This document shows, in pieces, positions 20,713 through 63,105 of a DNA stretch of 64,000 bases. Where the stretch lies: NCBI RefSeq assembly GCF_036588685.1, contig NC_086382.1, forward strand, positions 57,722,001 through 57,786,000, given 5' to 3'. Numbering within the stretch: the first letter of the stretch is position 1; each line of letters starts with the position of its first letter. The notes under the pieces were generated by a model. The model saw only the letters and a program-made list of their open reading frames with translations, ran no database searches and was not told the DNA's origin. A program made the position numbers and the translations under genes. The DNA is from Mytilus trossulus (lineage: Eukaryota).

Positions 20713-20845
20713 TCATATTAAGCCAAATACAGATGCAAACATCATTATATGAAGGAAAACGAAGTAGACCCATATCATTTTCCTTATTCCAGGTCGTTGT
20801 CTCATCAAGCGTGTTAGCTGTCGGCCAGATACACAGTAGTATTCC
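20713..20845 (-). CDS. GOLGB1: Giantin-like golgin terminal coding exon with C-terminal transmembrane tail-anchor
   Basis: Acceptor gatttttag|G; EYYCVSGRQLTRLMRQRPGIRKMIWVYFVFLHIMMFASVFGLI-TGA. Basic segment followed by a hydrophobic helix with Y-x4-H, as in giantin/CASP/golgin-84 anchors. Confidence 0.9.
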
Positions 20846-21328
20846 CTAAAAATCAAAGGGAGACAATTAGCTTACTAACTTTGAGAACATTCAAAAGACA
20901 CAACTTTAATCAAACTACTTTTAATGTGTTAATAGTTTCTTACATTTGTTGCTTACTAAACAAATTAATTCAGATATTTTTTGAAAAACTGAATGCTTGT
21001 AATCATTGGACTTAGTTCTGTGAAACCAATGATCATTAAACTTGATAAATATCAGAACAAATGATATTTCATCATTCTCATGTTTTGATTTTTCCACACA
21101 CTGAAGCAATAAAACCTAACAATAGACACCAATGATGAAGACATCCCAATGTTTCGCTTTACAAGGATTTCATTGCAGACGAGGCAAAAACAGTTAGTCT
21201 TACATCTTCCTTCCAAAGTCCCATGTGTATATATGTGCTTAAAGGATTTTCATGCATATTATTATAAAATTAAATTCAAAATGTTTTCATAAATCTTTAA
21301 GAATAGACAACAAAAATACAATACATAC

Positions 21329-21383
21329 TTCTGTATTCTCAGCCATCTTGTCATTCTGCAGAAATAAGTTGTATCATTTCTCA
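21329..21383 (-). CDS. GOLGB1: Giantin-like golgin penultimate exon (55 nt, phase 1-2), not in ORF track
   Basis: Strong acceptor tttactttcag|TG, donor AA|gtatgt; (L)RNDTTYFCRMTRWLRIQ(K); bridges the phases of both neighbouring exons. Confidence 0.78.
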
Positions 21384-22167
21384 CTGAAAGTAAATCAAAC
21401 AGGGAAGATAAATCTAAAAGGCTTTTTAATATGTAGTGTGAATAATATATTATCTAACAAACTAGGAAAACTTTCAACAGAGCTCACAAGTGTATACATA
21501 CTCTACTTATATAGAGTCTGACAGTGACCCCTAATTGGATAATTATACGTTATTTTTATACGTTGATAAATGTCTGGTAAAGGATAACAAATAACTGTCA
21601 GACACTATATAATTAAAGGCAGGGTTTTCATTAGAGGTTGCCATTTGGTATCTGGCATAAAATATGAAATTTTGGCAAATTACTTCTTTTTTTAGAGGAA
21701 GTTTTTTTACAAAAGAATCATAGCAGTTTGACAGCTTCCATTTTTCAAGTCTCTCCATTTTTTTCTTTATCAGCCTTTTAACCTTAAACTTGTCACATGT
21801 TGTGGTCTTGACAGAACATCAATAATCAGCTGTTTGGAAAAAAAACCCAAGCATTTGATAGATATCAAGATGTTAATTGTATTGCTGAAAAAAATTGTTT
21901 GTACAAATGGCCTCACGTTTCATTTAAATTGGCTGTGTTTACAACTTTAAAAATAAAGTTGGCACTTCCTAATCATTAAAGTCCTTGAACTATAAAATAA
22001 AAATTATCCAATAAATATAATTATTTACAATCCAATAACCCTGGAAAAGGGGATAGGTGGACAGTTTCATTGATTTTGTAATGTCCCTTTATTGAATTCA
22101 TAAATGTATTTTTTTTATTTATTCAAATTCATTGTTTATTTATCAAAATGTTGATGAAGGAATAATT

Positions 22168-22584
22168 AGAGGCTCTAAAGCAGAGGCGGATTTAGGGGGG
22201 GGGGGGGCCCTTTTTGGAAAAAAAATTGGTTGCTTATATAGGGAATCACTGAAGCGTGAGTGGAGCGGGCCCCCTCTTAGATCAGTCAGTGGGCCCCCAC
22301 TAATGAAAATTTCTGGATCCGCCACTGTAAAGAGCCTGTCTCGCTCACCTAGGTCTAAGTGAATATTCAACAAAGGACACAGATGAGATGGATTCATGAC
22401 ACCGGACACAATTTTTAAACTAGATACCCCAATGATGATTGTGGACAAGTTTGATTTTATTTGGCCCAGTAGTTCCAGAGGAGAAGATTTTTGTAAAAGT
22501 TAACAACGGACGAAGACGACGGACGACAGACGATGGATGCCGGACGCCAAGTGATGGGAAAAGCTCACTTGACCCTTTGGGTGA
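22168..22584 (-). mobile_element. Helentron-associated non-autonomous element (intronic)
   Basis: Palindrome ggctct(aaag)agcc plus gctcacct at one end, (gacg)n microsatellite and aagctcac..gtga at the other. Confidence 0.65.
22181..22327. mobile_element. MITE with 5-bp TSD inserted in a Helentron-type element
   Basis: TIR cagaggcggatttag / ctggatccgccactg; TSD TAAAG at 22176-22180 and 22328-22332. Confidence 0.85.
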
Positions 22585-22939
22585 TTTATGTACACCAAGA
22601 CTCCATATAACACATAAATAGAGTTCAAAATTAAAAGTAAGCTTGTTTGCAAAGAGTTCAATAAGTCTGCACGAAATAAAATTAAAGTGGGGAAAAATGA
22701 AATAGTTATCAAAAACCCTGAATAGAGTGCCACTATAAAACGATCATTTTGCCTTTGAAGAAGGTCCATGAAGGACCAAATGGGTCAGGCTATGAATCAT
22801 AAACAGGCACTGTTAATTATTTAATTTCTTCGTTACCCATACTTTTTACTGTTATTTATATACTTTAAACGAAATTTCACTGCTTATCAAAATGACAATT
22901 TATAAAATACAGGTCAAAGTTATAAATAGAGGACAAGTA

Positions 22940-23805: not shown

Positions 23806-23872
23806 ATAACATTGGACTTTCTTCTCTTATTCTGTCATCATCATAATCATCTTCTCCCATATCTATCTTCAA
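23806..23872 (-). CDS. GOLGB1: Giantin-like golgin exon (67 nt, phase 0-1), not in ORF track
   Basis: Acceptor ttttaccaacag|TTG, donor T|gtaagt; LKIDMGEDDYDDDRIREESPML. Confidence 0.8.
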
Positions 23873-24740: not shown

Positions 24741-24894
24741 CTCATCTCCCGTCTCTATACACCTAAGCCTAGCCTGGACAGCTGATAGAGCCTCTTCAGT
24801 CTGCAGTCTCTGTTCTCTCTCCATTTGTAATGTCTTTTCCAACCTCTCATTTGTTTCTGTTAATTGAGTTCTCACTCTGGCAAAGTCTGCCAAT
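24741..24894 (-). CDS. GOLGB1: Giantin-like golgin exon (154 nt, phase 2-0)
   Basis: Acceptor cattatag|A, donor GAG|gtaagt; LADFARVRTQLTETNERLEKTLQMEREQRLQTEEALSAVQARLRCIETGDE. Confidence 0.86.
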
Positions 24895-25312: not shown

Positions 25313-25485
25313 CTGGCCTCAAATTCTTTGTTTTCCATCCTCATGTCTTCTGATGTCTGTCGAAGTGGTTTGTCATTGATTGAGCTTTGAATAGCTGGCA
25401 ACTTTTCAACTTTGACCTCAGACAGTTCTATAGCATTAGCCTTTTGAATTTTCTCAGATGTAGCTTTTCTTTCAAATGAAATTAA
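25313..25485 (-). CDS. GOLGB1: Giantin-like golgin exon (173 nt, phase 0-2)
   Basis: Acceptor ttttcag|TTA, donor AG|gtttgt; LISFERKATSEKIQKAN...ENKEFEA(R). Confidence 0.82.
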
Positions 25486-26203: not shown

Positions 26204-26228
26204 CAAATAAACAAAAAAGCAAACCCAC

Positions 26229-26375
26229 CTTAGCCTGGAGTTCATTGTGTGCCTGGTACAATAATCTGTATTGTTTTTGTAGAGAACTCAGCTCTTGTTC
26301 TCGCCCCCTTAGAGCCTGTGAAAAGTTACCAAGCTGTTTGTTCAGATGACTTCTGTCCTCTGCTAACTGGCTCAC
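26229..26375 (-). CDS. GOLGB1: Giantin-like golgin exon (49 codons, phase 0-0)
   Basis: Acceptor ttttacag|GTG, donor AAG|gtgggt; VSQLAEDRSHLNKQLGNFSQALRGREQELSSLQKQYRLLYQAHNELQAK. Confidence 0.88.
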
Positions 26376-26786: not shown

Positions 26787-29700
26787 CTGTCTTGCAAGCT
26801 GTTGACACCTGGCTTCTCTCTGTTGTAATCTATGGTTTAACTGGTTACTTTCTGTTTGTGCCTGATTCTTCTGTCCCATAGCCACATTAAACTGTTTCTG
26901 TAACTGGTCATAATCTGCCTGAAACCTACTCGTCTGTTTTCCATCCTCATTGGACAGATTTAATTGGGATTGTAGGGAATTTTTATCAAACACTAACTGT
27001 TGTAATTCTCCCTCAACTTTTAGTAATTCCTGATTCACTTGAACGTTTTGATCAGAGTTTGTTTCTATTTGTTTTTCAAGATCTAGAATATGTTTGATCA
27101 GTCTGTCTTTTTCTCTTTCAAAATGGTCTCTTTCTTCTTTGATGATTAAAACATCTTTTTGAGACTCGCCTTGTTTTAACAGTCTTTGATGAAGTTCTTC
27201 TATTTGCTTTGCCATATTTGAATTGTCATTAATGATCTTACTATATTCTGCATTCATACTATTTAAATCAGTTTGTAATTTATCAAACATTGCACTTTTT
27301 TCATCTAACAATTGTTTTAACTTTTCATTCTCTTGTTTCATCATGCCACTTTCTCTTGAACTAGAATCTGGAGATTTTCCAACGTTTCGTACCTGTTCAC
27401 GTTTAATATTTTCATCAACCTCCACAACTTGTTTCACATCTAAATTATTCAGGAGAGAACTTATCTCTAAATTCTTTTCCTTAATTTCATTTTTCAAATT
27501 ATCAACATTTTTCACAGCCTCAGAATATTTTTCTCCCATTTCTTGGAATTCTTTCTGAAGTGAATCAAACATTTTGACCTTCATTTCTTGTGGACTTGTC
27601 CTTGACCTTAACCTTTCATTCTCTGACATCAATTCATTCAGTTCTTCATTGATGATATCTAATTGTTCTCTCAATCCTTCAACTTCTGAGTTATCAGCTT
27701 GAGTGCTTTCAGCAGCTTGCTTGATAAGATTACTATTTTCTTTCTCTAGATTTTCAAATTTCTTGTTCTGTTCTTCAAACTCACTTTGTAACTTGTCAAA
27801 CATTTGTAGTTTCATTTTATCAGGGCCAGCACCTTGTTTTAGATTCTCATTTTCGGACATTAATTCATTTAGTTCCTCGTTGATCATTTGAAGCTGCTCC
27901 TCCAAATCCGTGACCTTGGAGTCATTAGCTGCCACTTGAGGTCTATCAGAATCTTTAGATTTTTCTTGTTCCACAGTTTTAAGTTTTTCATTCTCTTCCA
28001 TTGCAGTACTGTATTTCTCAGCAAGGTCAGAAAATTGTTTTTGTAATGTATCATACATTTGTTCTTTCATTGCTGAAGGGTTAGATTTCAACCTTTCATT
28101 CTCAGACATGACTTCATTGAGCTCTTCATTTATAAGTTCCAATTGTTCTTCAAGGTCAGTCACATGATCATCTGAAGAAGAGGCTGTTTTTCCTTGTTTC
28201 AAATTTTCCAATTCTGCTTCTTTGGTTTTCAGTGATACCTTAGTTTGGTCTAGATCCTCTTTCATTTTTTTCCAATGTTCCTCACTGATACCAGATTTGT
28301 GTTCCTTCCTTGTACTTTCTAGCTCTAACCTAAGATCTTCAATCTCTTCTTCTAGTGATGACATTTCCTGAAGTTTCCAGTCCAGTCCTTCTCTTTCAAC
28401 TTGTTGTTGCTTACACAATGTTCGTAACTTTTCAACTTCCTTTTTCAAATCATCAACATTATCAGCTCCTTGAGCATTTTTAAATTCAGTCTTCAAGTTT
28501 TCTACTTTCTCTTTTGAGTCTTTCTTTTCATTGATCAGATCTTCCCTTAGACCGTCCATTTCTTCCATTATTTGTTCATGTTCTGATTCAAGTTCAGAGA
28601 TTCTAGTTTTTAAAACAGCTAACTGATTATTTTCTTTTTCTAATTCAGATATCTTGTTTCTCAAATCATTGACATCTCCACCCCCACCTTGCATTTGTTT
28701 GATTTTATGAAAATGTTCCTCTTTTTCTCGATTTAATGTTTGTTTTAGATTAGCAACAATTTCCCTGTAGCTTTTACACTCAGATTCGAGTTCATCACAC
28801 AACGATTGATTTTCCCTTACTTGTCTCTCATTTTCACTTTTACTTCGTTCCAAGATTTCAATTTCTGATCGTAATATTTCAGTTTCTACATGGAGTGTTT
28901 CTTTTTCTTTCAATCCTTGGTTCAAAGATTCTGATAATTTAGAATTCTCCTGTTTTAATATTTGACAATCATCAGATAATTTCAGATTTTGAGATTTTAA
29001 CTCTATTAATTGAGAACTTTCCGTTTCAATTTGCTGAAGCAATACTTCGATACGACTTTTATATTTTGTTTCATTTTCTAACACATGTGTATTCAATTTT
29101 TCATTCTTCAATTTTTCTGTGTCTAAAGATTGTATCACTTCCTCTTTTTCTCTTTTAACATTTTTTAATTCCAGTTCATATTTTTCTATTTCTTCTTTCA
29201 AAGCTTTGGTTGATGTCTCTGCATTAACATGGCCACTTTCCAAATTTGTAGTGGTCTCAGCAAGTTTTTCTTTAGTCTGATCTAGTTCAGTTTGTAAAGC
29301 CTGATTTTTAGCCTTGAATGCTTTAAGTTTAGTCAACATCTTCTCACATTTTGTCTCATTTACTGACACTTTCTCATGTAATGTTTTTATTTCATCTTTC
29401 AGAGCCTGAATTTCATGATTTTCTTCAGGGGCTGCTTGCCTAAGAGGCACAACTTGTACTTTTTCGATAGCATCACCCCAACCCTCCTGTACTTGAGAAT
29501 CTAAACCATATTCTGTTGCTGACTCTGTAAGTGGATCAATGGCTACCTTTTCTATTGTATCTCCCCATCCCATGTCTGTAACATGAGCTACATCTTTATC
29601 CATTTTCTCAGTTACTTCTTCTTTTCTTTCATTTATCATGCTATATTTAGATTCTAGTTCATTTTTTTCTTGACTAAGAATATTACATTTCTCTGTCAGT

Positions 29701-31520
29701 TCAACAATACCTTGCTTTAAATTTTCAACATCTGTTTCCAAATCATGAATTTTTTGTTGAGATTTATCCAGTTCACTATTTAATTCTAATTTTACTTGAG
29801 AATCTGTGGCTGAATTTAAAGTTAATGTTTCACATGTACTTTCTAGTTCTTGTAGTCTCTGAAGAGCTTCAGTTTTATTTTCTACTTCTCCTTTCAGATT
29901 AAGAATTTGTTCATTTGCCTGAGATAGTTTTTCCTCTAACTCCTCTCTAGCACTCTCTTTAGTTGATAATTCTGACCTACTAAGATCTAGTTCTTCTTTA
30001 TTACTATTAACCTCTGTTTGTAAATGTTCATTTTGTGCTGTAACTTCACTTAATTTTGCTTGCAGTTTCTGACATTGCTGTACAAGTTCGCTCATAGCTG
30101 TCTCAGAGTCTTTGTTGTTACCTGTTACTGCAGAAAACGATAACTCCAAATCTTGCTTTTCTGTAGTTAGTCTGTCAACACATAATTTAAGTTCAAGATT
30201 TTCCTCTGAAATCTTTTCAAGAGTCAGTGATAACTGGTCCTTTTCTTTAGAAATATTTTCTGTAGACTGTTTAAGTTCTTCAATATGTTTTGAAAGTGTT
30301 TCTTTTTCACTCATAAGATTACTGTTTCCTTCAGCTAAAATTGCAATTTGTTCTTGTAAAGATAAATTCTCTGATTTTAAATTTTCACTATCTGTGACCT
30401 GATTGGTTAATTCCAAAATTTCATTCCTCAGTGTTTCATTTTTTGCTGTCAGTTCATTTAATTCAGATTCTTTAGATTCAATTGTATTTTGAATCATTGT
30501 TATCTGGTCAGAAAACTGACTTTGCAGTAACTGTTTTTCTTCTGTTTGATTGGCTAATTTAATTTCAATATCTTTCATACTTTCCTTATACTGATGATCT
30601 AGTTGTGAGATATTCTCTTGCAGAGACTGATTTTCTTTTATTTGATTGGTTAATTTGGTTTCATAAAAACTTTGCAAGTCTTCAACTTTCTTTTCAATTT
30701 CATCACCTAAAGTCTCTTCACTATTCTCTAGTTTTTGTTTTAGGACACTTATTTCCTGTTCTGATGTTCCGATAACATCTTTTATAATTTCAGAAACTTG
30801 ATTCAGATTTTGGAAATCTATATGATGTAATTGAGGTGTGAGCAGTTTGAGACTGTGAGCAAATTGAGATAAATTTTCTTCATGGAATGCTAACTGATTT
30901 GATAAATCTACAATCTTTGAAGCTGTTTGTTCAAGATTTTTCTGAAGACTTTGCTTTTCTTCTTCAAGTTGCCCTTTTTCTATTTCCCCTTGTTTAACAT
31001 CATTCTGCAGCTGTTCCACTGATGACGTCTGCTTTCTGACTTCCTGTTGAAGAGATTGTATCAGTTCTTCAAAATTTCCTACTCTTTCTTCCATTTCTTT
31101 AACATAACTTTCTTTTTCTTCAGTTATTTTTTCTAACTCTAAAATTTTTGTTGATAATTTTTCAATTTCTGATTGTTTTTCTTGAAGTTCCTGTTTTTCC
31201 TCTTGAGCATCCAACTGAGATTTTTCTAAAGAGCTATTTATAGCAACATGATCATTTGAAAGTTGTTCATATTTTTGTGACAATTCTGACAATTGATTTT
31301 CTAATTCTGATTTTGTTTCTTCTAATACTGTTGAAGATTCAAATAATGTTTTGAACTTTTCTTTGATTTCTGCATATTGATGTTCTTTTGTTGATAATTG
31401 ATTAGATAATGTTTCTATTTCAGATGATTTCTGTTCAAGGAGTTCTTTGACTTCCAATAACTCTGCCTGTTTGCTTTCAAGTTCTTTTGATTTTGTCTGA
31501 CTATCCTCTTCTTCATGACC
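26787..31520 (-). CDS. GOLGB1: Giantin-like golgin large exon (4,734 nt, 1,578 codons, phase 0-0)
   Basis: ORF 26682..31457 extended to acceptor ttattcag|GGT; donor CAG|gtgtgt after EARCQQLARQ. Confidence 0.88.
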
Positions 31521-34640: not shown

Positions 34641-34644
34641 ATGT

Positions 34645-48900: not shown

Positions 48901-51900
48901 AATGTTCTTTCTCTTTAACAAGAACAGACATTTCCTCAGCTTTCATTTCCATTTCAGACTTGAGAGATGATACTGTCGTTACAAGGCTATTTCCTTCCTT
49001 CCTCAATGTTTCAACTTCTACCACTTTTTCTGACACAAATCCTTCTTTTTCATTAACAAGTGCTGCCAGATCTTCACACTTCCTATTTAATTCCTCTTCC
49101 AAACCAGTTGATCTTGTCATTAAAAGGTTGTTTTCTTCTTTCAAACTAGTAAGAGATTCTTTTAGACTAGTAATTGTGGATGCTAATTCATCTTTTTCTT
49201 TTTTAATGGATATCAAATTCTGAGAGTTGTCTTCCTTGTCTTTCTCAAGATTTGCAATAGAAGACAACAAATTGTTTTTCTCCTCTGACATAAATGCTAA
49301 GTCTTTTGTAAGGTTAGAAATATCAACTAATGACTTCTCATTTTCTATTTTCAAGAATGAAATTTCTTCATTTTTTTCAGCTAGTTTTCCTTTTAATCCT
49401 TTTATGTCATTTGTCAATTTGCAAACTTTCTCCTTATTTACAGATTTCTGTTTGGATATCAAATCTTCTTTTGATGATAGACTTTGTTTAGTTAATTCAT
49501 TCTCATTAGATAACACAAATAAACTTGTTGACATTTGTTCAAGATCATGTTCCAGTTTAAATTTTAAATCTGTTTGTAAATTTACGTCTTCTTTAAGGGA
49601 TTCCATATTTGATAAAAGACAATCTTTTTCAGCTGAAATTGAATCAATTTGTTCAAGTTTGTTTGCTAATTCAATTTTGAGTTCTGACACATTTGTTTGC
49701 ACACCATCTGTCTGTTGCATCAGCAATGACATTTTTTCTGTAGCTTTTTCAAGCTCACATTTCAAATTGGTCTCAGAAGATATCAATTGATCTTTTTCTT
49801 CAGTCAAAGCAGCTACAGTCAACATTAGTCCATCTTTTTCTTTTTGCAAAGAAACAAATTCAGTTTTAATAGTTTCATTACGCTCTTTAAATTTTGATGC
49901 TGTTAACATTATTTGTTCTTTTTCTTCCAATAATTTATTTCGGTCTGTATTTTTCAATTCTAAATTTGTCATCAAAGTTTCATTTTGTTCGGTGATGATA
50001 TCTACATCTGTGGATTTAATTTGCAATTCATCTTTGATTTCTACAATTGTGGCCTTCAAATTTTCCTGATCATGTGTCAAGTCAGCTATAGTTATATTTC
50101 TTGTTGACAATTCGTCTTTAACATTGGAGAGATCAGATAATAACCCATCATTTTCTTTCATTAAGCTGCTTATGTTGTCTGCTTTACCTAATATCTCATC
50201 TTGAAGACTTGATATTTGAATCAGCAGGTGCTCTTTCTCATTTTGAGTTTTAGTCAGTTTTACTTTGTGTCTCATCAGCTCAGATTTCAGTTTTACAGAT
50301 GTGTCTTCTTTTGCAGCAACATTCTGCACTGCTGTGTCTAATTCACTAGACAATATATTAACAGATGACAAAAGCTTTTCCACTTCTTTTTCTACAACCT
50401 GCTTCTCATCAGCTAACTGTAATTTCAGAGTTAACAAAAGTTCCTCATTTTTGGTCACTGCATTAGTTAGTTCTTTTGATTTATTAGACAATTCTTCCTT
50501 CAAACTAGACACAGTTAACATTAGGTCATCTCTCTCATGTGAAGCTGTTTCAATGTTTTCTTTTAGACTGGAAACAAGAGATGACATATCACATTTATCT
50601 TGTGTCAATGTGGCCAGTTCTTCCTTTAAACCTGTCACAGCTGAAACAAGATGCTCCTTTTCTTGTGATATTGTGGCTTCTTTTTCAGATTTAATGGACA
50701 ACTCTTCTTTAAGACAAGAAATAGTTGACACCAGACCATCTCTTTCTTGTGTCAAAGTTTCCAGTTCTTCATTAAGACTTGAAACAGTTGACATCAGATT
50801 GTCTTTGTCTTTAGTAAAAGTGGCAAGTTCTTCCTTGAGAAAGGAAATAGTTGACTCCCCACCATCTTTGCTCTCTGTCAAAGTGGCAATTTCCTCTGAC
50901 TTGACATTCAACTCTTCTTTCAGAAGGCAATTTGTGGCTAACAGGCCATCTTTTTCTTGTGTCAGTGTGACAATGTCTTCTGATTTGTTGGTCAGTTCTT
51001 CTTTCAGACTAGAAACAGTCGAAACCAGACCATCTTTTTCTTGTGTCAGTGTGACAATATCTTCTGACTTGTTGGTCAGTTTTTCCTTCAGACTAGAAAC
51101 AGTTGAAACCAGACCATCTTTTTCTTGTGTCAGTGTGACAATGTCTTCTGACTTGTTGGACAGTTCTTCTTTCAGACTAGAAACAGTTGAAACCAGACCA
51201 TCTTTTTCTTGTGTCAGTGTGACAATATCTTCTGACTTGTTGGTCAGTTTTTCCTTCAGACTAGAAACAGTTGAAACCAGACCATCTTTTTCTTGTGTCA
51301 GTGTGACAATATCTTCTGATTTGTTGGTCAGTTCTTCCTTCAGACTGGTAACAGTTGACACCAGACCATCTTTCTCTTGTGTCAGTATGACAAAACCTTC
51401 TGACTTGGTGGTCAGTTCTTCCTTCAAGCTAGAAACAGTTGCCACTAGACCATCTCTTTCTTGTGTCAGTGTGACCATACCTTCTGATGTGCTTGACAGT
51501 CCTTCCTTCAGATTAGAAACAGTTGACACGAGACAATCTTTTTCTTGTGTCAGTGTGATATTGTCATCTAGTTTGCTGGCAAGTTCTTCTTTAAGAATTG
51601 AAAGAGTTGACAATAAGCCATCTTTTTCTTGTGTCAATGTGAGAATGTCTTCTGACTTTGTGGTCAGTTTTGCCTTGTGCCTTATCAGCTCAGATTTCAG
51701 TTTCACAGAAGTGTCTTCTTTTGCAGCGACATTCTGCACTACTGTGTCTAACTCACTAGACAATATATTAACAGATGACAAAAGCTTTTCCATTTCTTTT
51801 TCTACAACCTGCTTCTCATCAGCTAACTGTAATTTCAGAGTCAACAAAAGTTCCTCATTTTTGGTCACTGCATTAGTTAGTTCATTTGATTTATTAGACA

Positions 51901-54900
51901 ATTCTTCCTTCAAACTGGACACAGTTGACATTAGGTCATCTCTCTTCTGTGTAGCTGTTTCAATGTTTTCTTTTAGACTGGAAACAAGAGATACCATATC
52001 ACATTTCTCTTGTGTCGATGTAGCCAGCTCTTCTTTCAAACCTGTCACAGCTGAAACAAGATGCTCCTTTTCTTTTGATATTGTGGCTTCTTTTTCAGAT
52101 GTAATTGACAACTCTTCTTTAAGACAAGAAATAGTCGACACTAACCCATCATTCTCTTGTGTTGATATGATAAGTTCTTCTGACTTTAATGCCAGTTCCT
52201 CATTAACATCAGAAACAGCTAATTTCAGACCATTTTTTTCTTGTGTCAATGTAACTATCTCTTTTGATTTGATTGTCAGTTCTTCATTTAGATTAGAAAC
52301 AGTTGACACCATATCATCTTTGTCTTGTGTCAATGTTGCAAGTTCTTTCTTAAGAATGGAAATAACTGACTCTACACCATCTTTGCTATCTGCTAATGAG
52401 GTGATCTCTTCTAACTTAATAGCCAACTCTTCTTTCAGAATAGAAACTGTGGCCATCAGGCCATCTTTTTCTTGCATCACTGTAGCTAGCCCTTCTGCCT
52501 TGCTGGATAGTTCTTCATTAAGACTAGAAACTGTAAACTTTAATGTATCTTTTTCTTTTGTCAATGTGATAATTTCATCTTGTCTGTTTGACAGTTCTTC
52601 CCTTAGACTTGAAACTGTGGACACTAGACCATCCTTCTCTTGAGTTACTACAGCAATGTCTTCTGTCTTAGTACTCAGTTCCTCCTGAAGATTAGATGCA
52701 GTTAATGCTATCTGATCTTTCTCTTTTTTGGCTGTCATTAATTCTTCTATCTTGTTAGCCAGTTCCTCCTGAAGGTTAGATGCAGTTAATGCTAGCTGAT
52801 CTTTCTCTTGTTTGGCTGTCATTAATTCTTCTATCTTGTTAGCCAGTTCCTCCTTTACACTGGAAACATTTAGTATAAGGCCGTCTTTTTCTTGATTCAT
52901 GACTGTTCGTTCTTCTTCAAGACTAGAAACAGTTGTTAACAGGCTATTATTTTGTTGTGTCAATGTGTTGATATCTTCTGATTTGTTAGTTAGTTCTTCT
53001 TTCTGGTTAGAAACAGTTAATACCATTTTCTCTTTGTCTTGTTCTGATGCTGCCAATTCTTTCTTGAGAACGGAGATAACTGACTCTACATCATCTTTGC
53101 TATCTGCCAATGAGGTGATCTCTTCCAACTTGATAGCCAACTCTTCTTTCAAATCAGATACTGTGGACGTCAAACCATCTTTTTCTTGCTCCAGAGTTGT
53201 TATCTCTTCTGACTTGTTGAATAGCCCTTCCTTAAGAGCTGAAACAGTAGATATGAGCCCATCACTTTCAGTTTTCAGTGTGACAATATCATCTGCATTG
53301 TTAGACAGTTTATCTTTGAGAGTACAAACATTTAACATCAGATGATCATTCTCTTGTGTCACTGCCATTAATTCATCTATCTTTTTAGCAAGTTCTTCCT
53401 TAACACTAGAAATAGTTAATAACAAGCCATCCTTTTCCTGTGAAAACATTGCCAGTTCCTCTTTAAGACTAGAAACAGTTGACATAAGACCATCTTTTTC
53501 TTGTGTCAGTGTGACAATGTCTTCTGATTTGTTGGTCAGTTCTTCCTTCAAGCTAGAAACAGTTGACATCAGACCATCTCTTTCCTGTGTCAGTGTGACA
53601 TTATCTTCTGATTTGTTGGTCAGTTCTTCCTTCAAGCTAGAAACAGTTGACATCAGACCATCTCTTTTTTGTGTCAGTGTGACATTATCTTCTGATTTGT
53701 TGGTCAATTCTTCCTTCAAGCTAGAAACAGTTGACATCAGACCATCTCTTTCTTGTGTCAGTGTGACATTATCTTCTGATTTGCTTGACAGTTCTTCCTT
53801 AAGACTAGAAACAGTTGACACCAAATCGTCTTTTTCTTGTGTCAGTATGACAAAATCTTCTGACTTGGTGGTCAGTTCTTCCTTCAAGCTATAAACAGTT
53901 GACATGATACCATCTCTTTCTTGTGTCAGTGTGACATTGTCATCTAATTTGGTGGCAATTTCTTCTTTGAGACTAGAAACAATTGACACCAGACCATCTT
54001 TTTCTTGTGTCAATGTGAGAATGTCTTCTGACTTGGTGGTCAGTTTTGCTTTGTGTCTTATCAGTTCAGATTTCAGTTTCACAGAAGTGTCTTCTTTCGC
54101 AGCAACATTTTGCACTGCTGTGTCTAATTCACTAGACAATATATTAACAGATGACAAAAGCTTTTCCATTTCTTTTTCAACTTCCTGCTTCTCATCAGCT
54201 AACTGTGATTTTAGAATCAAAAAATGTTCCTCATGTTTGGTCAGTGCATTGGTTAGGTCATTTGATTTATTGGACAGTTCTTCCTTCAAACTGGACACAG
54301 TTGATATTAGGTCATCTCTCTCATGTGTAGCTGTTTCAATGTTTTCTTTTAGACTGGAAACAAGAGATACCATATCACAATTCTCTTTTGTCAATAGAGC
54401 CAGTTCTTCCTTTAACCTTGTAACAACTGAAACAAGATGATCATTTTCTTGTGTAAATGTGGATTCTTTTTCCGATTTAATGGATAACTCTTCTTTAAGA
54501 CAAGAAACAGTTGACACCAGACCATCTCTTTCTTGTGTCAAAGTTGTCAGTTCTTCATTAAGACTTGAAACAGTTGACGTCAGATTGTCTTTGTCTTTAG
54601 TCAATGATCCAAGTTCTTCCTTGAGAACAGAAATAGTTGACTCCCCACAATCTTTGCTCTCTGTCAAAGTGGCAATTTCCTTTGACTTGACAATCAACCT
54701 TTCTTTCAGAAGGGAATTTGTGGCTAACAGGCCATCTTTCTCTTGTGACAGTGTGACAATGTCTTCTGACTTGTTGGACAGTTCTTCTTTCAGACTAGAA
54801 ACAGTTGAAACCAGACCATCTTTTTCTTGTGTCAGTGTGACAATATCTTCTGACTTGTTGGTCAGTTTTTCCTTCAGACTAGAAACAGTTGAAACCAGAC

Positions 54901-57900
54901 CATCTTTTTCTTGTGTCAGTGTGACAATGTCTTCTGACTTGTTGGACAGTTCTTCTTTCAGACTAGAAACAGTTGAAACCAGACCATCTTTTTCTTGTGT
55001 CAGTGTGACAATATCTTCTGACTTGTTGGTCAGTTTTTCCTTCAGACTAGAAACAGTTGAAACCAGACCATCTTTTTCTTGTGTCAGTGTGACAATGTTT
55101 TCTGATTTGTTGGTCAGTTCTTCCTTCAGACTAGAAATAGTTGACACCAAACCGTCTTTTTCTTGAGATAGTATGACAATGTCTTCTGATTTGTTGGTCA
55201 GTTCTTCTTTCAGACTAGAAACAGTTGAAACCAGACCATCTTTTTCTTGTGTCAGTGTGACAACGTCTTCAGATTTGGTGGTCAGTTCTTCCTTCAGACT
55301 AGAAACATTTAATTTGAGGCCATCTTTTTCTTTTTCCAAAGTAGCCACTTCTTCTACAAGTCTAGAGATAGATGACAATTGACCATCTATTCCTTGGGTC
55401 ATTAAAGCTAAATCTTCTACCTTTTTAGTCAGTTCTTCCTTGAGACTAGAAACAGTTGACACCAGACCATCTTTTTCTTGGATCATAACAGCCATTTCTT
55501 CAGATTTGTTGCGCAGTTCTTCATTATGACTAGAAACAAGACCATTTGTTTCCTGTGTCAAAGATGTCAGTTCTTCCTTTAAACTAGAAACAGTTGACAC
55601 TAGACCGTCTTTTTCTTGTGTCAGTAAGACAATATCTTCTGATTTACTGGTCAGTTCTTCCTTCAGACTAGAAACAGTTGACACTAGACCATCTTTTTCT
55701 TTTATCATTACAGCCATTTCTTCAGATTTGTTGCTAAGTTCTTTATTAAGACTAGAAACAAGACCATCTTTTTCTTGTGTTAGTGTGATAATGTCTTCTG
55801 ATTTGTTGGTCAGTTCTTCCTTGAGACTGGTAACAGTTGAAACCAGACCATCTTTTTCTTGTGTCAAAGATGTCAGTTCTTTCTCCAGACCATCTTTTTC
55901 TTGTGTCAGGTTGACAATGTCATCTGATTTGTTGGTCAGTTCTTCCTTCAGACTAGAAACAGTTGACAACAAACCATCTTTTTCTTGATTCAAAGTTGAT
56001 AGTTCTTCATTTAGACTTGAAACTGTTGACAGTAGGCCATCTTTACCTTGTGATATTGCTTCAAGATTACTTTTTAAAGTTGATATATTTTTCTCTGTCA
56101 TCTGAACATCCTCTAATAACTTTTTATTCAACATTTCTGCTTGTTTACTTAATTTTTGTTCATGCTCATACTTTTCAGTCATTGTTGCAAGTTCATGTTT
56201 AGCTTGTTCATGCTCACTATAAAGAGAATCAAATTTGGCAGTTAAAGTCTCTACTTGTGATTCCAAGTCTGATGCATGCTGGGCAAAGGTCATTTTATTT
56301 TCAGCCAATTGAGTTTGTAATTTGTGAATATCACTCATGCATATCTTGTTTTGTTTATTGATGCATGCTGTGAGAGACTTGTACTCAGTATCATGCATAA
56401 TAAAATGATTTTCTGAATCAGCGAGAGTTTGAGACAGGGTATCTATCTGTATTCTTCTATCGTCACATAAAAGTTTAAATTCACTGACCTGCTTCTGTAG
56501 ATTTGCATTCTCTGTTTCTAAGGTTTCAAACTTTGAAGAAAATCTTTGCTGCTCGTTTTGTAACTGTTGCTCTAATTCTTCAACCTTTTCATCTTTCAAT
56601 CTAAGTTCATTTTGTAATTCTCCAATGGAATGTTCTAAAGTGTTTTGCTCTTTTTGCAATGTTTTTACTTTTAACTCATAATCTTGTTCCTCAGATCCAT
56701 GTTTTTGTCTGAGTGCATCTGTCTCTGTCTCTTTAAATTTGATTTCATTCTGTAAAGCTTCAACTGATTGTTCTATATTTTTAATTTCACAATTTTTCTT
56801 GTCTTCAAGTTCTTTAAGTTGCAATATGAATTCTTCCTTCTGATTCTTACATTTATCCTTCCACTCCTTCACTAGACTTTCCTGTGACTTTTCACTACTT
56901 TGGATGTCACTGATAAGTTCCTTTGATTCCTTCAAATCATTGTGTAGTGTCTCTATATCCTTTTCTTTTGCATTCAGTGCCTCATCTAATTTATTTTTTT
57001 CATTTTGAATTTGTTTTATGTGTTCATCTTTTTCATTAACATCCTTGGTTACTTTGTCCATTTCAGTTTTAAGTTTGTTTAACATTTCAGTTTTAGCAAA
57101 TATTTCTTCCTCGATTCTTGATTTATCTAGTTCTAAAGCTTCTAGGCTTGTAAAATTTTCTTCCAGTTTGAGTTGAAGAGCAGATTTTTCCTCTAACATT
57201 TTATCATTAGTTTGTTTTAAAGATTCTAAATTGGAATTGAGTTTTTCAGTTTCAATTTTCACACTTTGAATTACATTTTGTTGTTCATCAACTTGAAACT
57301 GTAATGTTTTAACTTCATCATCTTTGTCATTTAATTTTTTATCAAATTCACTTGTTAAATTTAATTTAGCTTTTTCTGATTCATTGATTTTTTCGTTTAA
57401 ATTTTTAATTTCATTGTTTGTGTCAGCTAATCTTTCATCTTTCTCGTTGATCACTTTTTGAAGGGAGACAACTCTATCCTCTGCATTGGATGAAAGGGAC
57501 ATAATGGTAGCCTCCTTTTCACTACAAAGTTTGTTTACTTGTTCAATCTGTAAGTCCAGCTGTGACTTTTCATAAGATAATTCTGATAATTGATTTTTTA
57601 GTTCAGAAAGTTCACTTTGGTATTGTTTAGATTTTTCAGTCACCTCTTCCATTCTCTCATTTAGTTGCTCTTCCGTTAATTTTGCCTGCTTATAGTAAGA
57701 TTGTAATAAGTCGTCACTATGTTTAAGATCGTCGAATTTTTCATTTAAATTATCATAATTGGTCTGAAGTTGATCTTTCTCACTTTTAACTGTTTCCATG
57801 ACTACTTGTAATTCTTGGAACTGCTGTTTAAATCTATTTTGTTCGTCACTTGACTTTTCTTTAGTCTCATTATGAGTTTCCTCTAATTTCATTAATTCAT

Positions 57901-58618
57901 CCTTTACTTTTTCCAGCTTGTTACTCTCAGAATTAAGTTCCTCTGTTTTACATTTTAATTCCTCTTTAAGATCTGCAATAACTTTTTCAAACTGATTTAT
58001 TTCAGAATTAAGTCCTTCAGATTTAGCACAAACCTCCTCATGTTGTATCTGTAAGTTGCTCTTTTCATTAGAAATCTGATTAATAGCTTCATCTTTAGCT
58101 TTTATTTCTTGGTTTAAAGTTTCAATTTCTTGTACATTCATGTCAAATTCTGAATTTCTTTCTATCAACTGATTCTTTACTTCATCTATTTCAATTTTAC
58201 ATTCCTTTAGATCTTCTTCATACTTTTTATTACTACTTTCTAAACTATTAGTCAAAGTTTTCAATTTTTCAGTCTCTTCTGACAGAATTTCTTTTTCTTT
58301 TTCTAATACCTCAATTTTATCTTTTAAACTTTGAACCTCATTGTCATTTTCATTGGATTGTTCAGTTACTTGATTAAGATTTTCAAGAGATGAAGATAAT
58401 TTAACATTCAAAATTTCAATATCATTTTGCAAATTTTTGTTATCAGTTTCAAGTTTACTATATTCTTTTTCTTTTCTTATGAAATCTTGATTCTTTTCTT
58501 CCAACGATGTTTCATATTCACTAATTTTTTGCTCAAGCTGTGTTGAATTATTATAAGCTTCCTGGAGTGCTTTCTTGTGATCCTTTTCCAGTTGTTCAAT
58601 AAACTCCTGTTGTTCCAC
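45935..58618 (-). CDS. GOLGB1: Giantin-like golgin giant exon 1 (12,684 nt, 4,228 codons, phase 0-0) containing 28-aa repeat array
   Basis: Uninterrupted ORF 45911..58618 bounded by acceptor gtgttttag|GTG and donor AAG|gtgatt; E/K/L/S/T-rich heptad pattern throughout. Confidence 0.88.
50255..56050 (-). repeat. Coding tandem repeat, 84-bp/28-aa unit (LTQEKDGLVSTVSSLKEELTNKSEDIVT) with 21-aa variants and higher-order blocks
   Basis: Directly visible in DNA (cagactagaaacagttgaaaccagaccatctttttcttgtgtcagtgtgacaat...) and protein; degenerate units continue toward ~46400. Confidence 0.95.
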
Positions 58619-60142: not shown

Positions 60143-60457
60143 CTTTAGTTTCTCAAGGCTATCTTCTTTTGATTCATTCTCTTGGTTAACATCATGGATC
60201 TGATTGGTTAGTTGTTCAATCTGTTTCTTGTATTCTGTGATTTGATTGGTCAGTTCATCTGATGTCTGCTTAGAGGATGTTAATTCTTGTTGTAAGTTAT
60301 TCAACTGGTCTTTCAAGTCCTTTGAACTATTTTTCTCCGACTCCAACTGGACATTTAAACTTTCTATTTCTTTTGATAATTCCTGAACTTTCTTGTTGGC
60401 AGCATCCAGATTAATTTTAAGTTCATTTGATTCATTCGATGGTTGGTCCTTCTTTCC
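60143..60457 (-). CDS. GOLGB1: Giantin-like golgin exon (105 codons, phase 0-0)
   Basis: Acceptor ttttag|GGA, donor AAG|gtaagg; includes most of ORF 60107..60346; heptad-rich. Confidence 0.88.
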
Positions 60458-60999
60458 CTAAAATTTACAAATTATATATTTTTTTATCTACCTTTCACTT
60501 AAGTACATGACTTTGTATGTGTACCTTCAAACAATGCAATATTTTTTTTAAAAGTTAGTCATTCAATACTCCCATAGATGTTATAATATAGGATCATTCT
60601 CTAAACAAAGGTATCCAAGTATTATAATAGATGGTTTTGTTCAGGAGATGTTATATCATTTTTTGTAAAACTTTTAAATACTTATTGCCAATTCCATTTT
60701 ATTATTTTGTTTGACCAATTCTATATGCATCATATATGTAAATATAAATAAGAAAATGTGGTATAATGAGCCAAAGTTATTGACGTATGTTTCAATAAAT
60801 AAAAAAAATAAGTATTTATTAGGGTGCAATGATTTTGTCTGCATAGTATACCATATTACACAAGGACATAACTAATATGGTGTTAATATAGCGGATTTAT
60901 ATAGCTTGATTGACCAATACACTTTCCGATTACAAATATGAATGCATCTTTTTTTTAAATCCAGACTATAGCTTGGTAATTTTATTTCTAGAAAATTAC

Positions 61000-62076
61000 C
61001 TGTTTCAACTTCTCTACCTCCTTTTCAAGAGATTTAATCTTGGATGTCATTTGTGCCTTCATTTTCAACATTTTAGGATCTGACTTCCCACTACTAGAAG
61101 GTGCTTCTTCCTTTTTCAGAGAATTCATTTCAGTTTCTAAATCTTTTATTTTCTGTTTCATTTTATCATTATCATTATTCAGTTCATCAACTATTTTATT
61201 CTTTTCTTGAATTTGCTTTTCTAAATCTAATACTGTTTTATCATTTTGTTCAGAATTTTGACTTGTGCTGCCATCTTGCTGAGTTACTGGAACAGCGCCC
61301 CCTGGTGTCAGTGTCTGCTGGAATCTAGCCTGCAGTTTGTTATATTGTTCCATGGCCTGTGTATAGAGAGCTTGATATTGTGTTAGTTGACTTTGCATTG
61401 AATGTGTCTGTAATTCTTTCTCAGATTGTTCATGATCATGTTTCTCAATAAGTTCCCTCATTCTTTCATTTAAACGACTTTTTTCTTCTTTCCATTGCAT
61501 TTCCATATCAACTTGATCTGCATTCAGCAACATCAATTGTTCAGATGTTACTTGCAATTTTTCCTTAAAATTTTTTTGAATATCTAAATTTTCATTTATT
61601 TGCTTCTCTTTTTCTTTATTCTCCTTTTGCAGAACCTCAATGACTTTAATTTTACCTTCTAAAACTTCATTTGTGTCTTTGAGATTTTGTTCCAACATTT
61701 TTAAAACTTGATCCTCAAGATTTATTTCACCTTTAGACATAATTCGTTGAACATCTTGTTCATGCCTTGAAATAATTTCCTTAAGATCCCCATCCCTCAT
61801 TGAAATTTCATCGTTTTTAACCTGAACAAGATTCCGTAAGTTTTGAATCTCATCTTCACGTTCTTTTAACGATTCTTCGAAATATCTCTGAGATTCTTGT
61901 AGTCTGAGATTGAATCTTTCTGATTCTTGTTTGAGTTGATGTTGAGATTTGTCCACTTCTTCTTTAAGAGTATCCTGTGTTTCTTCACCATGTTCTACTT
62001 TTGATGACAGTTTGGCAATAAGAGCATTCTGATCATGGACAGTCTGATCTTTTTCTCTTATTGATGTCTGTAGAAT
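61000..62076 (-). CDS. GOLGB1: Giantin-like golgin exon (359 codons, phase 0-0)
   Basis: Extends ORF 60988..61956; acceptor attactag|ATT (second in-frame acceptor ctacag|ACA would start at 62067); donor CAG|gtaatt; coiled coil ending KMLKMKAQMTSKIKSLEKEVEKLKQ. Confidence 0.88.
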
Positions 62077-62946
62077 CTAGTAATATATCAAAAACACAAT
62101 ATTAAGTAAAGCACTACTCAAATTTAAAAGCATCAATAAATAATGTGATTTAATAAACAAAACAAAACTTAACAAGAGTAGAACTATATTTCAATTAAAC
62201 CAAACAAAATTTTTGTTTGCACATAGCATTTGATTAGGGACTTTCCGTTTTAAATTTTCCCCAAAGTTCAGTATTTGTGTGATTTTACTTTTCAACATGT
62301 ACATGTAAGACTGGGTTTAAATTCCTATATGCAGATCCCCAGGTAGGACAAAAGTTTCACTAAAATCCATCAAGCTAGGAAGAGTGGTGCTGAAGAGTGT
62401 TTATTATATTGTAATATTGCAATGTTGAAGTCAAGTTAGTTTGATTATCTCCCCTTAAACACATAAGACTGAGATCAAATTTCTTAAAGCACATCTGGTA
62501 GAGTTCTACAGCATTGTGAAGTTTGGGACTAAAGTTTTAGACTGATCATTTTCAACTAAAGCTGACTCTGAAAAATGCCAAATTGACTTTATTTTCACTT
62601 TTTCGTGAATTGGATGACTACACGCTACTTTTCGAAACAGTTATTAAGTGAGTCTTAAGCTTACAGCACTGAAGTTATGAACAATTATCATTATTGATCA
62701 TCCAATTTATTCTGATATGCATAACATCATTATGATATTCATGTATACAATATGGAAGGAAACTTTTTTTGCTTCAATTGTTTTCTTTTTTAAAAACCAA
62801 TTTTTTCCATCAGATGTTTGCCTTGAATAATCTTAAAAATCATAGCAAAGCAATGGTTTTTGAAATAAAAAAATGTTGAATCCCACTGAAGTTTTTTCAA
62901 CATAATGTATATTTCTGTTTTTTATATAGTTATCGAAAATTCATAC

Positions 62947-63105
62947 CTCCACTACTTTATCTCTTCCTCTTATCACTTCATTTTTCTCTGAAATATATTC
63001 CTGCAAATCCATCAATTTCCCTTCCATTTCTAGAATTTTGTTGTTTAGTTCTAATAAGTTTTTGTCTTTATATACCATTTGTGCATACATAGCCTGCATA
63101 TTTCC
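62947..63105 (-). CDS. GOLGB1: Giantin/lava lamp-like golgin, most 5' coding exon found in window (53 codons, phase 0-0)
   Basis: Acceptor tttttgcacag|GGA and donor GAG|gtatga; encodes GNMQAMYAQMVYKDKNLLELNNKILEMEGKLMDLQEYISEKNEVIRGRDKVVE; in frame with next exon. Start codon lies outside the window. Confidence 0.85.

What the first reader, a model, noticed from the sequence alone, without database searches (positions are those of the whole stretch)
20713..63105. A supersized giantin-like Golgi tether: at least ~8,700 aa with a tail-anchor
Seen in sequence: 15 GT-AG exons join in frame to about 8,711 aa with the N-terminus still outside the window, and end in IWVYFVFLHIMMFASVFGLI*. Established: the Tyr/His tail-anchor marks giantin, CASP and golgin-84, and human giantin is about 3,260 aa. 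Inference: if all exons are co-spliced this golgin is over 2.5 times human giantin. At ~0.15 nm per coiled-coil residue it could reach ~1.3 micrometres, far more than ordinary vesicle tethering needs, which suggests an organelle-scale spacer or cytoskeletal linker. Automated annotation would probably split it into several uncharacterised coiled-coil ORFs.
Basis: partly seen in the sequence, partly recalled or inferred. Interest (0 to 1): 0.78.

Follow-up and report, generated by a model that had tools for sequence, protein, structure and literature searches.

The report
Giant tail-anchored Golgi-type coiled-coil gene
A bivalve gene is predicted to encode a roughly one-megadalton rod-shaped protein with a Golgi-type membrane anchor, a much longer version of a protein family already annotated in snails and octopuses.

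Summary
On the minus strand, 14 GT-AG exons (13 supported, one 18-codon exon unsupported) run from 63105 to the stop at 20713. They include stop-free exons of 4,228, 1,794 and 1,578 codons and end in the quoted hydrophobic tail. Three more 5' exons lie just outside the window, and a start codon there matches the start of mollusc homologues. The model sums to 26,511 nt, 8,837 aa and about 1.01 MDa.

Single proteins of Lymnaea, Octopus, Argonauta, Biomphalaria and Patella (3,670-5,722 aa) are colinear with both the head exons and the tail exons. Some are named 'golgin subfamily B member 1(-like)'. So this is one gene of that family.

Spliced transcript contigs from 4 of 4 runs join the last six exons down to the membrane-anchor exon. 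The same genome has separate CASP and golgin-84 genes.

Not shown: splicing of the two largest exons into the same mRNA, and direct similarity to a vertebrate giantin (none retrieved). The extra length sits in the central rod, including about 63 copies of a 28-residue unit.

The 'organelle-scale spacer' idea remains speculation.

The scan had noted the 28-residue repeat on this same window (s1-824030). It had not noted the gene on other DNA.

The parts
62947..63105 (-). Exon D, 53 codons, phase 0-0. It is the first exon inside the window; three earlier exons lie beyond base 64000.
   Evidence: AG/GT at both ends. 54-78% identical to residues about 130-227 of 5 mollusc homologues.
61000..62076 (-). 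Exon E, 359 codons; conserved head region.
   Evidence: 37-45% identical over its full length to P0037, P0043, P0040, P0042 and P0041, E 1e-84 to 1e-101; tblastn. Single copy in the genome.
60143..60457 (-). Exon F, 105 codons; rod.
   Evidence: Stop-free, with AG directly before 60457 and donor AAG|GTAAGG. Only generic coiled-coil similarity. No transcript test.
45935..58618 (-). Exon G, 4,228 codons; central rod.
   Evidence: 0 stops against 407 in a shifted frame. 58 of 59 windows show 3.5-residue periodicity above the shuffled 95th percentile, with 1 proline. Pfam gives only coiled-coil families. No transcript test.
50253..56070 (-). Array of 28-residue (84-bp, four-heptad) repeats inside exon G, about residues 850-2620 of the exon. 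Includes a 1.3-kb block repeated at an offset of 3,786 nt.
   Evidence: TRF arrays of period 84. Lag-28 identity reaches 0.92. Block copies are 91% identical and the others 70-86%.
38531..43912 (-). Exon H, 1,794 codons; rod.
   Evidence: Stop-free, phase 0-0 splice sites. 18 of 24 windows are heptad-periodic. No transcript test.
36510..36563 (-).
   Evidence: AG/GT sites and an open frame only. 0 of 12 homologues match. H joins J in frame without it.
32215..33120 (-). Exon J, 302 codons; conserved rod landmark.
   Evidence: Matches 12 of 12 homologues. In the long ones it falls at the colinear place, for example P0037 1600-1880 and P0038 3811-4107.
26787..31520 (-). Exon K, 1,578 codons; rod.
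   Evidence: Stop-free; 16 of 21 windows are heptad-periodic. A phmmer search with its last 1,200 residues found 31 proteins.
26787..27341 (-). Conserved membrane-proximal rod segment, the last 185 or so residues of exon K.
   Evidence: Best-matching stretch in 14 of the 31 hits begins at query residue 1015-1148 and ends at 1200. 33-50% identical.
26229..26375 (-). Exon L, 49 codons.
   Evidence: Joint 26229->25485 in 4 of 4 runs. In the 10 of 12 homologues that match exon L (all 10 also match the K end), the match begins at the residue right after the K match ends.
25313..25485 (-). Exon M, 173 nt; ends in phase 2.
   Evidence: Contig pieces 25313-25476/85, contiguous in the record with exon N (X2 record 9, X3 record 19).
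24741..24894 (-). Exon N, 154 nt.
   Evidence: Pieces 24741-24894 in 4 of 4 runs. Joint 24741->23872 in 4 of 4 runs.
23806..23872 (-). Exon P1, 67 nt.
   Evidence: Acceptor fixed by the joint at 23872. Donor TAT|GTAAGT chosen. Peptide matches P0007, P0003 and P0037 near their C-termini.
21329..21383 (-). Exon P2, 55 nt; boundaries inferred.
   Evidence: Depth in bin 21316-21515 in 4 of 4 runs. Of 5 GT-AG combinations that fit the 122 nt missing from the contigs, 3 keep an open frame; this is the one that uses the GTAAGT donor at P1. Peptide matches P0003 and P0005.
20713..20845 (-). Last exon O, 130 nt plus TGA; the final 21 residues (20716-20778) are the membrane anchor.
   Evidence: Pieces 20716-20844/5 lie in the same contigs as exon N (X2 record 9, X6 record 22) and, in X2 record 9, exon M. 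44-62% identical to the C-termini of 9 homologues. Weak CASP_C match to the anchor part, E 0.019. 7 nt differences in 'organism A' contigs give 1 conservative change.

Best explanation
This is a single bivalve gene of the mollusc 'golgin subfamily B member 1-like' family, that is, giantin-like tail-anchored golgins. Its open reading frame sums to 8,837 aa and about 1.01 MDa.

Shown:
- The exon structure.
- A conserved head of about 570 residues (exons A-E).
- A heptad-periodic rod of about 7,800 residues.
- A conserved membrane-proximal segment, and a 21-residue hydrophobic anchor at the very C-terminus.
- The anchor has the R-x-P-x-x-R...Y-x4-H pattern seen in this genome's own golgin-84.
- The last six exons are spliced together in transcripts.

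Inferred from what is published for giantin, golgin-84 and CASP:
- The protein is inserted after translation through its tail by the TRC40/GET route.
- It leaves the ER with the help of the anchor tyrosine and sits at Golgi cisternal rims.
- It pairs into a parallel coiled coil that holds the conserved head away from the membrane, or lies along the rim in golgin bands.

The centre of the rod acts as a length-variable spacer. In this lineage it has grown by tandem gain of a 28-residue (four-heptad) unit and by larger block duplications, both of which keep the coiled-coil register.
For: - Gene structure.
- One gene: exons A, B, C, D, E, J, K, L, P1 and O hit P0037 (Lymnaea, 3,670 aa) in the same order, at residues 11-39, 40-60, 83-158, 170-217, 218-567, 1600-1880, 3039-3446, 3447-3495, 3592-3607 and 3628-3669. 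P0043 (5,711 aa) is likewise colinear for A-E, J, K and L.
- Start codon: the homologues begin at the same place.
- Transcripts: joints 26229->25485 and 24741->23872 have CT..AC ends in 4 of 4 runs. Single contigs carry M+N+123 nt+O (X2 record 9) and N+123 nt+O (X6 record 22). Most intron bins are empty.
- Coiled coil.
- Repeats.
- Anchor family: CASP_C E 0.019 on the anchor. Same motif spacing as the own golgin-84 exon. The Atlas places the Pecten C-terminal fragment next to golgin-84 (0.93) and CASP (0.90) clusters.
- Separate CASP and golgin-84 genes.
- Names of relatives.
- Purifying selection on the anchor exon.
- Literature passages: anchor similarity and the conserved tyrosine (PMC5840792); histidine in the anchor and TRC40 binding (PMC6633398); rim position and filament bands (PMC11974933).
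Against: - No read or contig evidence was obtained for junctions E>F, F>G, G>H, H>(I)>J, J>K or, directly, K>L. The one read-laying run covered 20716-26715 only.
- The runs are Logan contigs labelled 'RNA?' (a guess), not raw reads. They held only 0.20-0.23 of the sampled words of 20700-30699.
- Exon G found no relative in the 2,325-7,399 aa length band; its only hit was a fish CENP-E at 25% identity.
- No vertebrate giantin appeared. The 31 hits include no protein of about 3,200 aa.
- No Pfam family reaches its cut-off except a generic coiled-coil one.
- No protein of this species itself turned up, so there is no independent gene model.
- Golgi localisation, pairing and function are untested.
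Confidence: 0.8

Rival explanations
1. It is one gene, but the giant exons G and/or H are cassette exons that are usually skipped. The common protein would then be about 2,800-7,000 aa, like other molluscs, and the 8,837-aa form would be rare or absent.
For: Every exon from A to L starts and ends in phase 0, so any of them can be skipped in frame. Homologues have only 1,032 aa (P0037) to about 3,131 aa (P0043) between the E-like and J-like parts, against 6,127-6,145 aa here. Exon G found no relative. No transcript data for G or H.
Against: Stop-free frames of 4,228 and 1,794 codons in AT-rich DNA, against 407 stops in a shifted frame, show that both exons are translated. Their splice sites are as good as those of the confirmed exons. 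Repeat copies are 70-91% identical yet all in frame.
Confidence: 0.3
2. Two or more separate same-strand genes have been merged: a head gene, one or more rod genes and a short tail-anchored gene, as the short bivalve database entries would suggest.
For: Pecten (401 aa), Ostrea (477 aa), Tegillarca (476 aa) and Pinctada (915 aa) entries hold only the C-terminal part, under unrelated names.
Against: Gastropod and cephalopod proteins contain both head and tail. The giant exons begin at AG acceptors without a start codon and end at GT donors without a stop. Homologue sequence runs straight across the K|L boundary in the 10 of 12 homologues that match exon L.
Confidence: 0.05
3. The length is inflated by an assembly error in the repeat array of exon G.
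For: The array spans 5.8 kb of 84-bp units and contains a block repeated at an offset of 3,786 nt.
Against: The best pair of copies is only 91% identical and the rest 70-86%. There are no N runs in the window and the frame is never broken. Even without the whole array the model would be about 6,900 aa.
Confidence: 0.05

Closest known systems
Mollusc 'golgin subfamily B member 1(-like)' proteins: Lymnaea stagnalis 3,670 aa, Octopus sinensis 4,163 aa, O. vulgaris 4,923 aa, Argonauta hians 5,060 aa (partial), Biomphalaria glabrata 5,722 aa; also Patella caerulea 'hypothetical protein' 3,989 aa
   Same: The start, head, J landmark, membrane-proximal segment and anchor are colinear. The small cassette before the anchor is also shared; Patella has it in one of two isoforms. 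The Biomphalaria protein has its own tandem repeats in the rod (seen in its sequence).
   Different: This gene is 1.5 to 2.4 times longer. The excess lies between the E-like and J-like parts: 6,127-6,145 aa here against 1,032 to about 3,131 aa. It includes a 28-residue array that tblastn with five of these proteins did not match.
Vertebrate giantin (GOLGB1), 376 kDa in human (PMC11974933, passage)
   Same: A very long coiled coil with a C-terminal membrane anchor that contains a histidine (PMC6633398) and resembles the anchors of golgin-84 and CASP (PMC5840792). Databases name the mollusc relatives after it. I also recall a resemblance in the first 60 or so residues; this is recalled, not tested.
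   Different: About 2.7 times the mass. No vertebrate sequence was retrieved by any search here, so orthology is not demonstrated. PMC5840792 states that giantin is chordate-specific.
Golgin-84 (Pfam Golgin_A5) and CASP (Pfam CASP_C)
   Same: The same kind of tail anchor, with the R-x-P-x-x-R...Y-x4-H spacing. The Atlas neighbours of the Pecten fragment belong to these families.
   Different: Both have their own genes elsewhere in this genome (C3 and C8/C65). No exon here reaches either family's cut-off. In the translation of the own golgin-84 exon the anchor is followed by about 17 more residues; here the protein ends with the anchor.
Drosophila lava lamp and the insect 'giantin orthologue'
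   Same: Long coiled-coil Golgi proteins that have been called giantin's closest fly relatives (PMC4707255; PMC11974933).
   Different: The melon fly protein is 120 kDa and has no transmembrane domain. PMC5840792 found no giantin homologue in Drosophila. Not compared here.

Membership tests
Tail-anchored golgins (giantin / golgin-84 / CASP class) | A single hydrophobic anchor at the extreme C-terminus, after a long cytoplasmic part | tested here: met
   The last 21 residues are hydrophobic and are followed directly by TGA. The exon is spliced to upstream exons in contigs.
Tail-anchored golgins (giantin / golgin-84 / CASP class) | Conserved Tyr and His in the anchor and a basic/Pro motif before it | tested here: met
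   Same spacing as the golgin-84 exon of this genome. CASP_C profile positions 215-246 match at E 0.019, 14.8 bits, below the 28-bit cut-off. Tyr and His are kept in the 'organism A' contigs.
Tail-anchored golgins (giantin / golgin-84 / CASP class) | Predominantly coiled-coil cytoplasmic part | tested here: met
   3.5-residue periodicity above the shuffled 95th percentile in 58/59 (G), 18/24 (H), 3/3 (J) and 16/21 (K) windows, but only 1/4 in head exon E.
Tail-anchored golgins (giantin / golgin-84 / CASP class) | Localisation to Golgi membranes | not testable with these tools
   Needs tagging or antibody work in cells.
Mollusc GOLGB1-like family | Colinear similarity of head, landmark, membrane-proximal segment and anchor to one protein | tested here: met
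   E values run from 1e-84 to 1e-101 for exon E, and 1e-34 to 1e-86 for the last 400 residues of K.
Vertebrate giantin (GOLGB1) orthologue | Significant sequence similarity to a vertebrate giantin, ideally reciprocal best hit | tested here: inconclusive
   0 vertebrate giantins in 4 of 4 searches. Three of the four use a word index with length limits. The full HMMER search used only the last 1,200 residues of K. Only database names link the family to GOLGB1.
Vertebrate giantin (GOLGB1) orthologue | It is the third tail-anchored golgin, beside CASP and golgin-84 | tested here: met
   CASP_C matches at C8:77.13 Mb and C65:0.74 Mb. Golgin_A5 matches at C3:19.20-19.24 Mb. This gene is single copy on C10.
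Vertebrate giantin (GOLGB1) orthologue | Binding of p115, Rab1 and ACBD3/GCP60 | not testable with these tools
   Known for mammalian giantin (PMC3605407 abstract start in listing; PMC4707255 passage).
Golgin-84 (PF09787) | Match to the Golgin_A5 profile | tested here: not met
   No Golgin_A5 hit for any exon. The profile finds another locus in the genome.
CASP (PF08172) | Match to the CASP_C profile over its length, above the cut-off | tested here: not met
   Only positions 215-246 of 252 match, at 14.8 bits against a cut-off of 28. The profile finds other loci above the cut-off.

The most novel reading that the evidence does not exclude
The full 8,837-aa, 1-MDa protein is made as one chain. 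That would make it the longest golgin described, with a theoretical fully extended length near 1.3 micrometres, against the 50-500 nm quoted for golgins. It would also be a true giantin orthologue, so giantin would predate chordates, contrary to a published survey. Molluscs would then offer a natural length series (3,670 to 8,837 aa) produced by register-preserving 28-residue repeats. With that series one could test whether the length of a rim golgin sets any dimension of the Golgi.
Probability: 0.35. Interest if true: 0.7.

Novelty: new member of a known kind. Interest (0 to 1): 0.5.

Why it matters
How a golgin's length relates to its job is unsettled. Passages I read give two pictures. Golgins span about 50-500 nm if fully extended, and giantin failed to capture vesicles in a relocation assay (PMC4707255). 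Rim golgins may instead form filament bands around cisternae (PMC11974933).

A tail-anchored family whose head and tail stay conserved while the rod varies 2.4-fold among molluscs is a ready-made comparison for that question.

The locus also bears on a published claim. A survey calls giantin chordate-specific (PMC5840792). Its text names no Lottia, Crassostrea, Capitella or lophotrochozoan. I could not see its supplementary taxon tables.

On the practical side, the locus shows how annotation loses such genes. Four bivalve entries keep only a 401-915 aa C-terminal piece. The Pecten one is named 'CAP-Gly domain-containing linker protein 1-like' and the Ostrea one 'Rad50 ATPase'.

Tried and rejected
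- A word-index search with exon G returned only a fish CENP-E at 25% identity.
- A search with the head of P0043, in a length band reaching about 10,000 aa, returned only two molluscs besides the query itself, no vertebrate and no longer orthologue.
- Pfam gave nothing specific for the head exons, the conserved end of K, or the homologues P0037 and P0039.
- A PDB sequence search with P0037 gave 0 matches.
- Rfam gave 0 matches in the window.
- There is no ORF of 110 aa or more in 1-20700.
- Three intronic or flanking ORFs had no Pfam match.
- Cluster look-ups of 10 unnamed hits gave no names or taxa.
- The paper search was badly framed (20,727 papers) and gave nothing. One search ('giantin' plus 'mollus', 10 papers) found no paper on a mollusc giantin; I judged that from the listing for all 10 and from passages in one.
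- I considered golgin-84 and CASP identity and rejected both.
- I considered an assembly artefact and rejected it because the repeat copies have diverged.
- I ran no structure prediction, because a helical rod would not separate the readings.

Full report
**What is in the sequence**

The minus strand between 63105 and 20713 carries a chain of stop-free stretches with strong coding-strand skew. The largest are 4,235, 1,824 and 1,618 codons. All exons from D to L begin and end in phase 0. As a control, the 12.7-kb exon read one base out of frame has 407 stops, and the true frame has none (error text). The window contains no N.

**The 3' end, fixed with transcripts**

The look-up of sequencing runs listed 24 runs, all kept as Logan contigs and labelled 'RNA?'. 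They held 0.10-0.23 of the sampled words of 20700-30699. I laid four of them (X1 and X6 of 'organism A', X2 and X3 of 'organism B') on 20716-26715, which is 6,000 letters.

- Two joints with CT..AC ends, meaning GT..AG on the minus strand, occur in 4 of 4 runs: 26229>25485 and 24741>23872.
- X2 record 9 (669 nt) carries 25476-25313, then 24894-24741, then 123 nt not listed, then 20844-20716, and runs 99 nt further.
- X6 record 22 carries 24894-24741, 123 nt, then 20844-20716.
- X3 record 19 joins 25485-25313 to 24894-24741.
- Most intron bins have zero depth. Bins 23716-23915 and 21316-21515 have low depth in all four runs.

Because these records skip introns at canonical sites, they behave as spliced RNA.

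The missing 122-123 nt is explained by two small exons. Of the five GT-AG combinations that fit this length, three keep an open frame. I chose the one that uses the GTAAGT donor at P1: 23872-23806 and 21383-21329. Both peptides match homologue C-termini.

Exon K lay outside the stretch, so K>L was not tested directly. Pieces of exon L run 4 nt past the acceptor, to 26379, and then leave 3 loose letters (X6 records 27 and 28). That is what a K-L junction would give, because K and the intron both end in ACAG.

**The 5' end**

The next 10 kb of the contig (L002) holds three more exons, at window-equivalent 66240-66124, 64648-64541 and 64255-64007. The first has an ATG five bases after an acceptor. 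Its peptide aligns with the first residues of P0037, P0043, P0040 and P0042, so the start codon is found.

**Size**

I summed exon lengths without joining them. This gives 26,511 nt, which is 8,837 aa and about 1,013 kDa. Of these, 8,679 aa lie in the window. Without the unsupported 18-codon exon I the total is 8,819 aa. Exon B has a second possible donor 9 nt further on.

I did not build or search a joined protein. Every search was made exon by exon or with database homologues.

**Nature of the protein**

- Exons G, H, J and K are rich in Glu, Lys and Leu. Exon G has one proline in 4,228 residues.
- Hydrophobic 3.5-residue periodicity exceeds the shuffled 95th percentile in 58/59, 18/24, 3/3 and 16/21 windows of G, H, J and K. 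In head exon E only 1 of 4 windows does.
- Pfam reports only coiled-coil families. Nucleoprot-TPR (63 bits in G) is the sole one above its cut-off.
- Residues about 850-2620 of G form an array of a 28-residue unit. Lag-28 identity reaches 0.92 and TRF finds period 84.
- Inside the array a 1.3-kb block is repeated at an offset of 3,786 nt at 91% identity. The other copies are 70-86% identical.
They also argue against an assembly duplicate.

**Relatives**

A full HMMER search with the last 1,200 residues of K found 31 proteins at E <= 0.001. The conserved part is the last 185 or so residues. The named hits are molluscs:

- Patella caerulea, 3,989 aa, 'hypothetical protein'
- Pinctada imbricata, 915 aa
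- Pecten maximus, 401 aa, 'CAP-Gly domain-containing linker protein 1-like'
- Tegillarca granosa, 476 aa
- Ostrea edulis, 477 aa, 'Rad50 ATPase'

Searching with the Patella C-terminus added more: Lymnaea (3,670 aa, UniRef name 'Golgin subfamily B member 1'), Biomphalaria (5,722 aa), Octopus sinensis (4,163 aa), O. vulgaris (4,923 aa), Argonauta (5,060 aa, partial) and two unnamed Logan proteins.

tblastn and per-exon blastp show strict colinearity. In P0037 the exons A, B, C, D, E, J, K-end, L, P1 and O hit residues 11-39, 40-60, 83-158, 170-217, 218-567, 1600-1880, 3039-3446, 3447-3495, 3592-3607 and 3628-3669. Ten of the 12 homologues match exon L, and all ten also match the end of K. In each of them the L match starts at the residue after the K match ends. 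This supports the K>L junction independently of the contigs.

Head and tail therefore belong to one gene. The in-frame, same-strand exons between them have no start or stop of their own and are most simply its rod.

The part between the E-like and J-like segments is 1,032 aa in Lymnaea and about 3,131 aa in P0043. Here it is 6,127-6,145 aa.

Exon E occurs once in the genome.

**The anchor**

The last exon gives a weak CASP_C match confined to the anchor (E 0.019).

The genome has its own CASP gene, on C8 with a second copy on C65. It also has its own golgin-84 gene, on C3.

The golgin-84 anchor exons of this genome show the same spacing of Arg, Pro, Arg, Tyr and His as the anchor here.

In the 'organism A' contigs, 7 nucleotide differences in this exon cause one Val>Ile change.

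The Atlas places the Pecten fragment next to golgin-84 (0.93) and CASP (0.90) clusters; this is a lead only.

From passages I read:
- The three tail-anchored golgins share anchor similarity and a tyrosine needed for ER exit (PMC5840792).
- Giantin's anchor has an unusual histidine, and these golgins bind TRC40 (PMC6633398).

PMC133590, the original CASP/giantin paper, is not held.

**Is it giantin?**

This is not settled. No vertebrate sequence came back, and the 31 hits include no protein near 3,200 aa. The link rests on database names, on the anchor, and on the fact that this is the third tail-anchored golgin of the genome. I also recall a resemblance at the N-terminus, but I did not test it.

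PMC5840792 states that giantin arose in chordates. Its text names no lophotrochozoan genus that I searched for. I could not see its supplementary tables, which may list the taxa sampled.

PMC11974933 speaks of a 120-kDa melon fly 'orthologue' without a membrane domain.

**How it probably works**

Shown: the architecture, and splicing of the tail.

Inferred:
- tail-anchored insertion and Golgi rim residence;
- pairing into a rod that presents the conserved head;
- a central rod that tolerates gain of whole four-heptad units.

At about 0.15 nm per coiled-coil residue (textbook value) the chain could reach about 1.3 micrometres. The range quoted for golgins is 50-500 nm. Whether it is ever extended is unknown. 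The rim-band model would let a long rod lie along the rim instead.

**Limits**

- Splicing of F, G, H, I and J into the same mRNA is untested.
- Other agents' notes call this genome a mussel. I did not test that. My closest named hits are bivalves.

**Verdict**

This is a real, single, expressed gene. It is a new and unusually long member of the mollusc GOLGB1-like tail-anchored golgins. It is of moderate interest, and more so if the full-length form is made and orthology to giantin is shown.

Noticed in passing
window 22116-23715 (intron between exons P1 and P2): Thousands of contigs from all four runs lie here at mostly 90-99% identity, with summed depths up to about 186,000. Many loose ends start ATGGCGGCCATCTTGG... 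This looks like a high-copy, transcribed repeat element. Two ORFs in it have no Pfam match.
   Followed up: partly
L002 5659-6242 and 7444-8027 (window-equivalent 69659-70242 and 71444-72027): Two pairs of ORFs (46 and 57 aa) have identical translations 1,785 bases apart. This suggests a near-identical tandem duplication a few kb upstream of the gene's first coding exon.
   Followed up: no
G000 C8:77128607-77129791 and C65:738830-739609 (L004-L007): The CASP_C profile matches two loci with near-equal scores (39.4 and 38.9 bits; 25.3 and 25.9 bits). This is either a duplicated CASP gene or an uncollapsed second haplotype.
   Followed up: no
window 25313-25485 (exon M): Contigs differ from the window at 10-15 of about 155-173 bases here. 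In exons N and O the 'organism B' runs differ at only 1-2 bases. Only one homologue (Pinctada) matches this exon weakly. It appears to be a fast-evolving linker between conserved parts.
   Followed up: partly
P0007 versus P0033 (Patella caerulea), and window 20825-20845: The two Patella isoforms differ by a 7-residue cassette just before the anchor motif. The window's last exon, and the Biomphalaria, Lymnaea, Argonauta and Tegillarca proteins, carry the long form. This may be a conserved alternative acceptor.
   Followed up: no
window 1-20700: Downstream of the gene there is no ORF of 110 aa or more on either strand. The whole window has no Rfam match.
   Followed up: partly
one search hit list: The best hit to the end of exon K is only 41% identical (Pinctada). 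The closest fragments are 56-88 aa at 69-76%. No protein of the window's own species appears, so this gene may have no usable model in the public protein sets searched.
   Followed up: no
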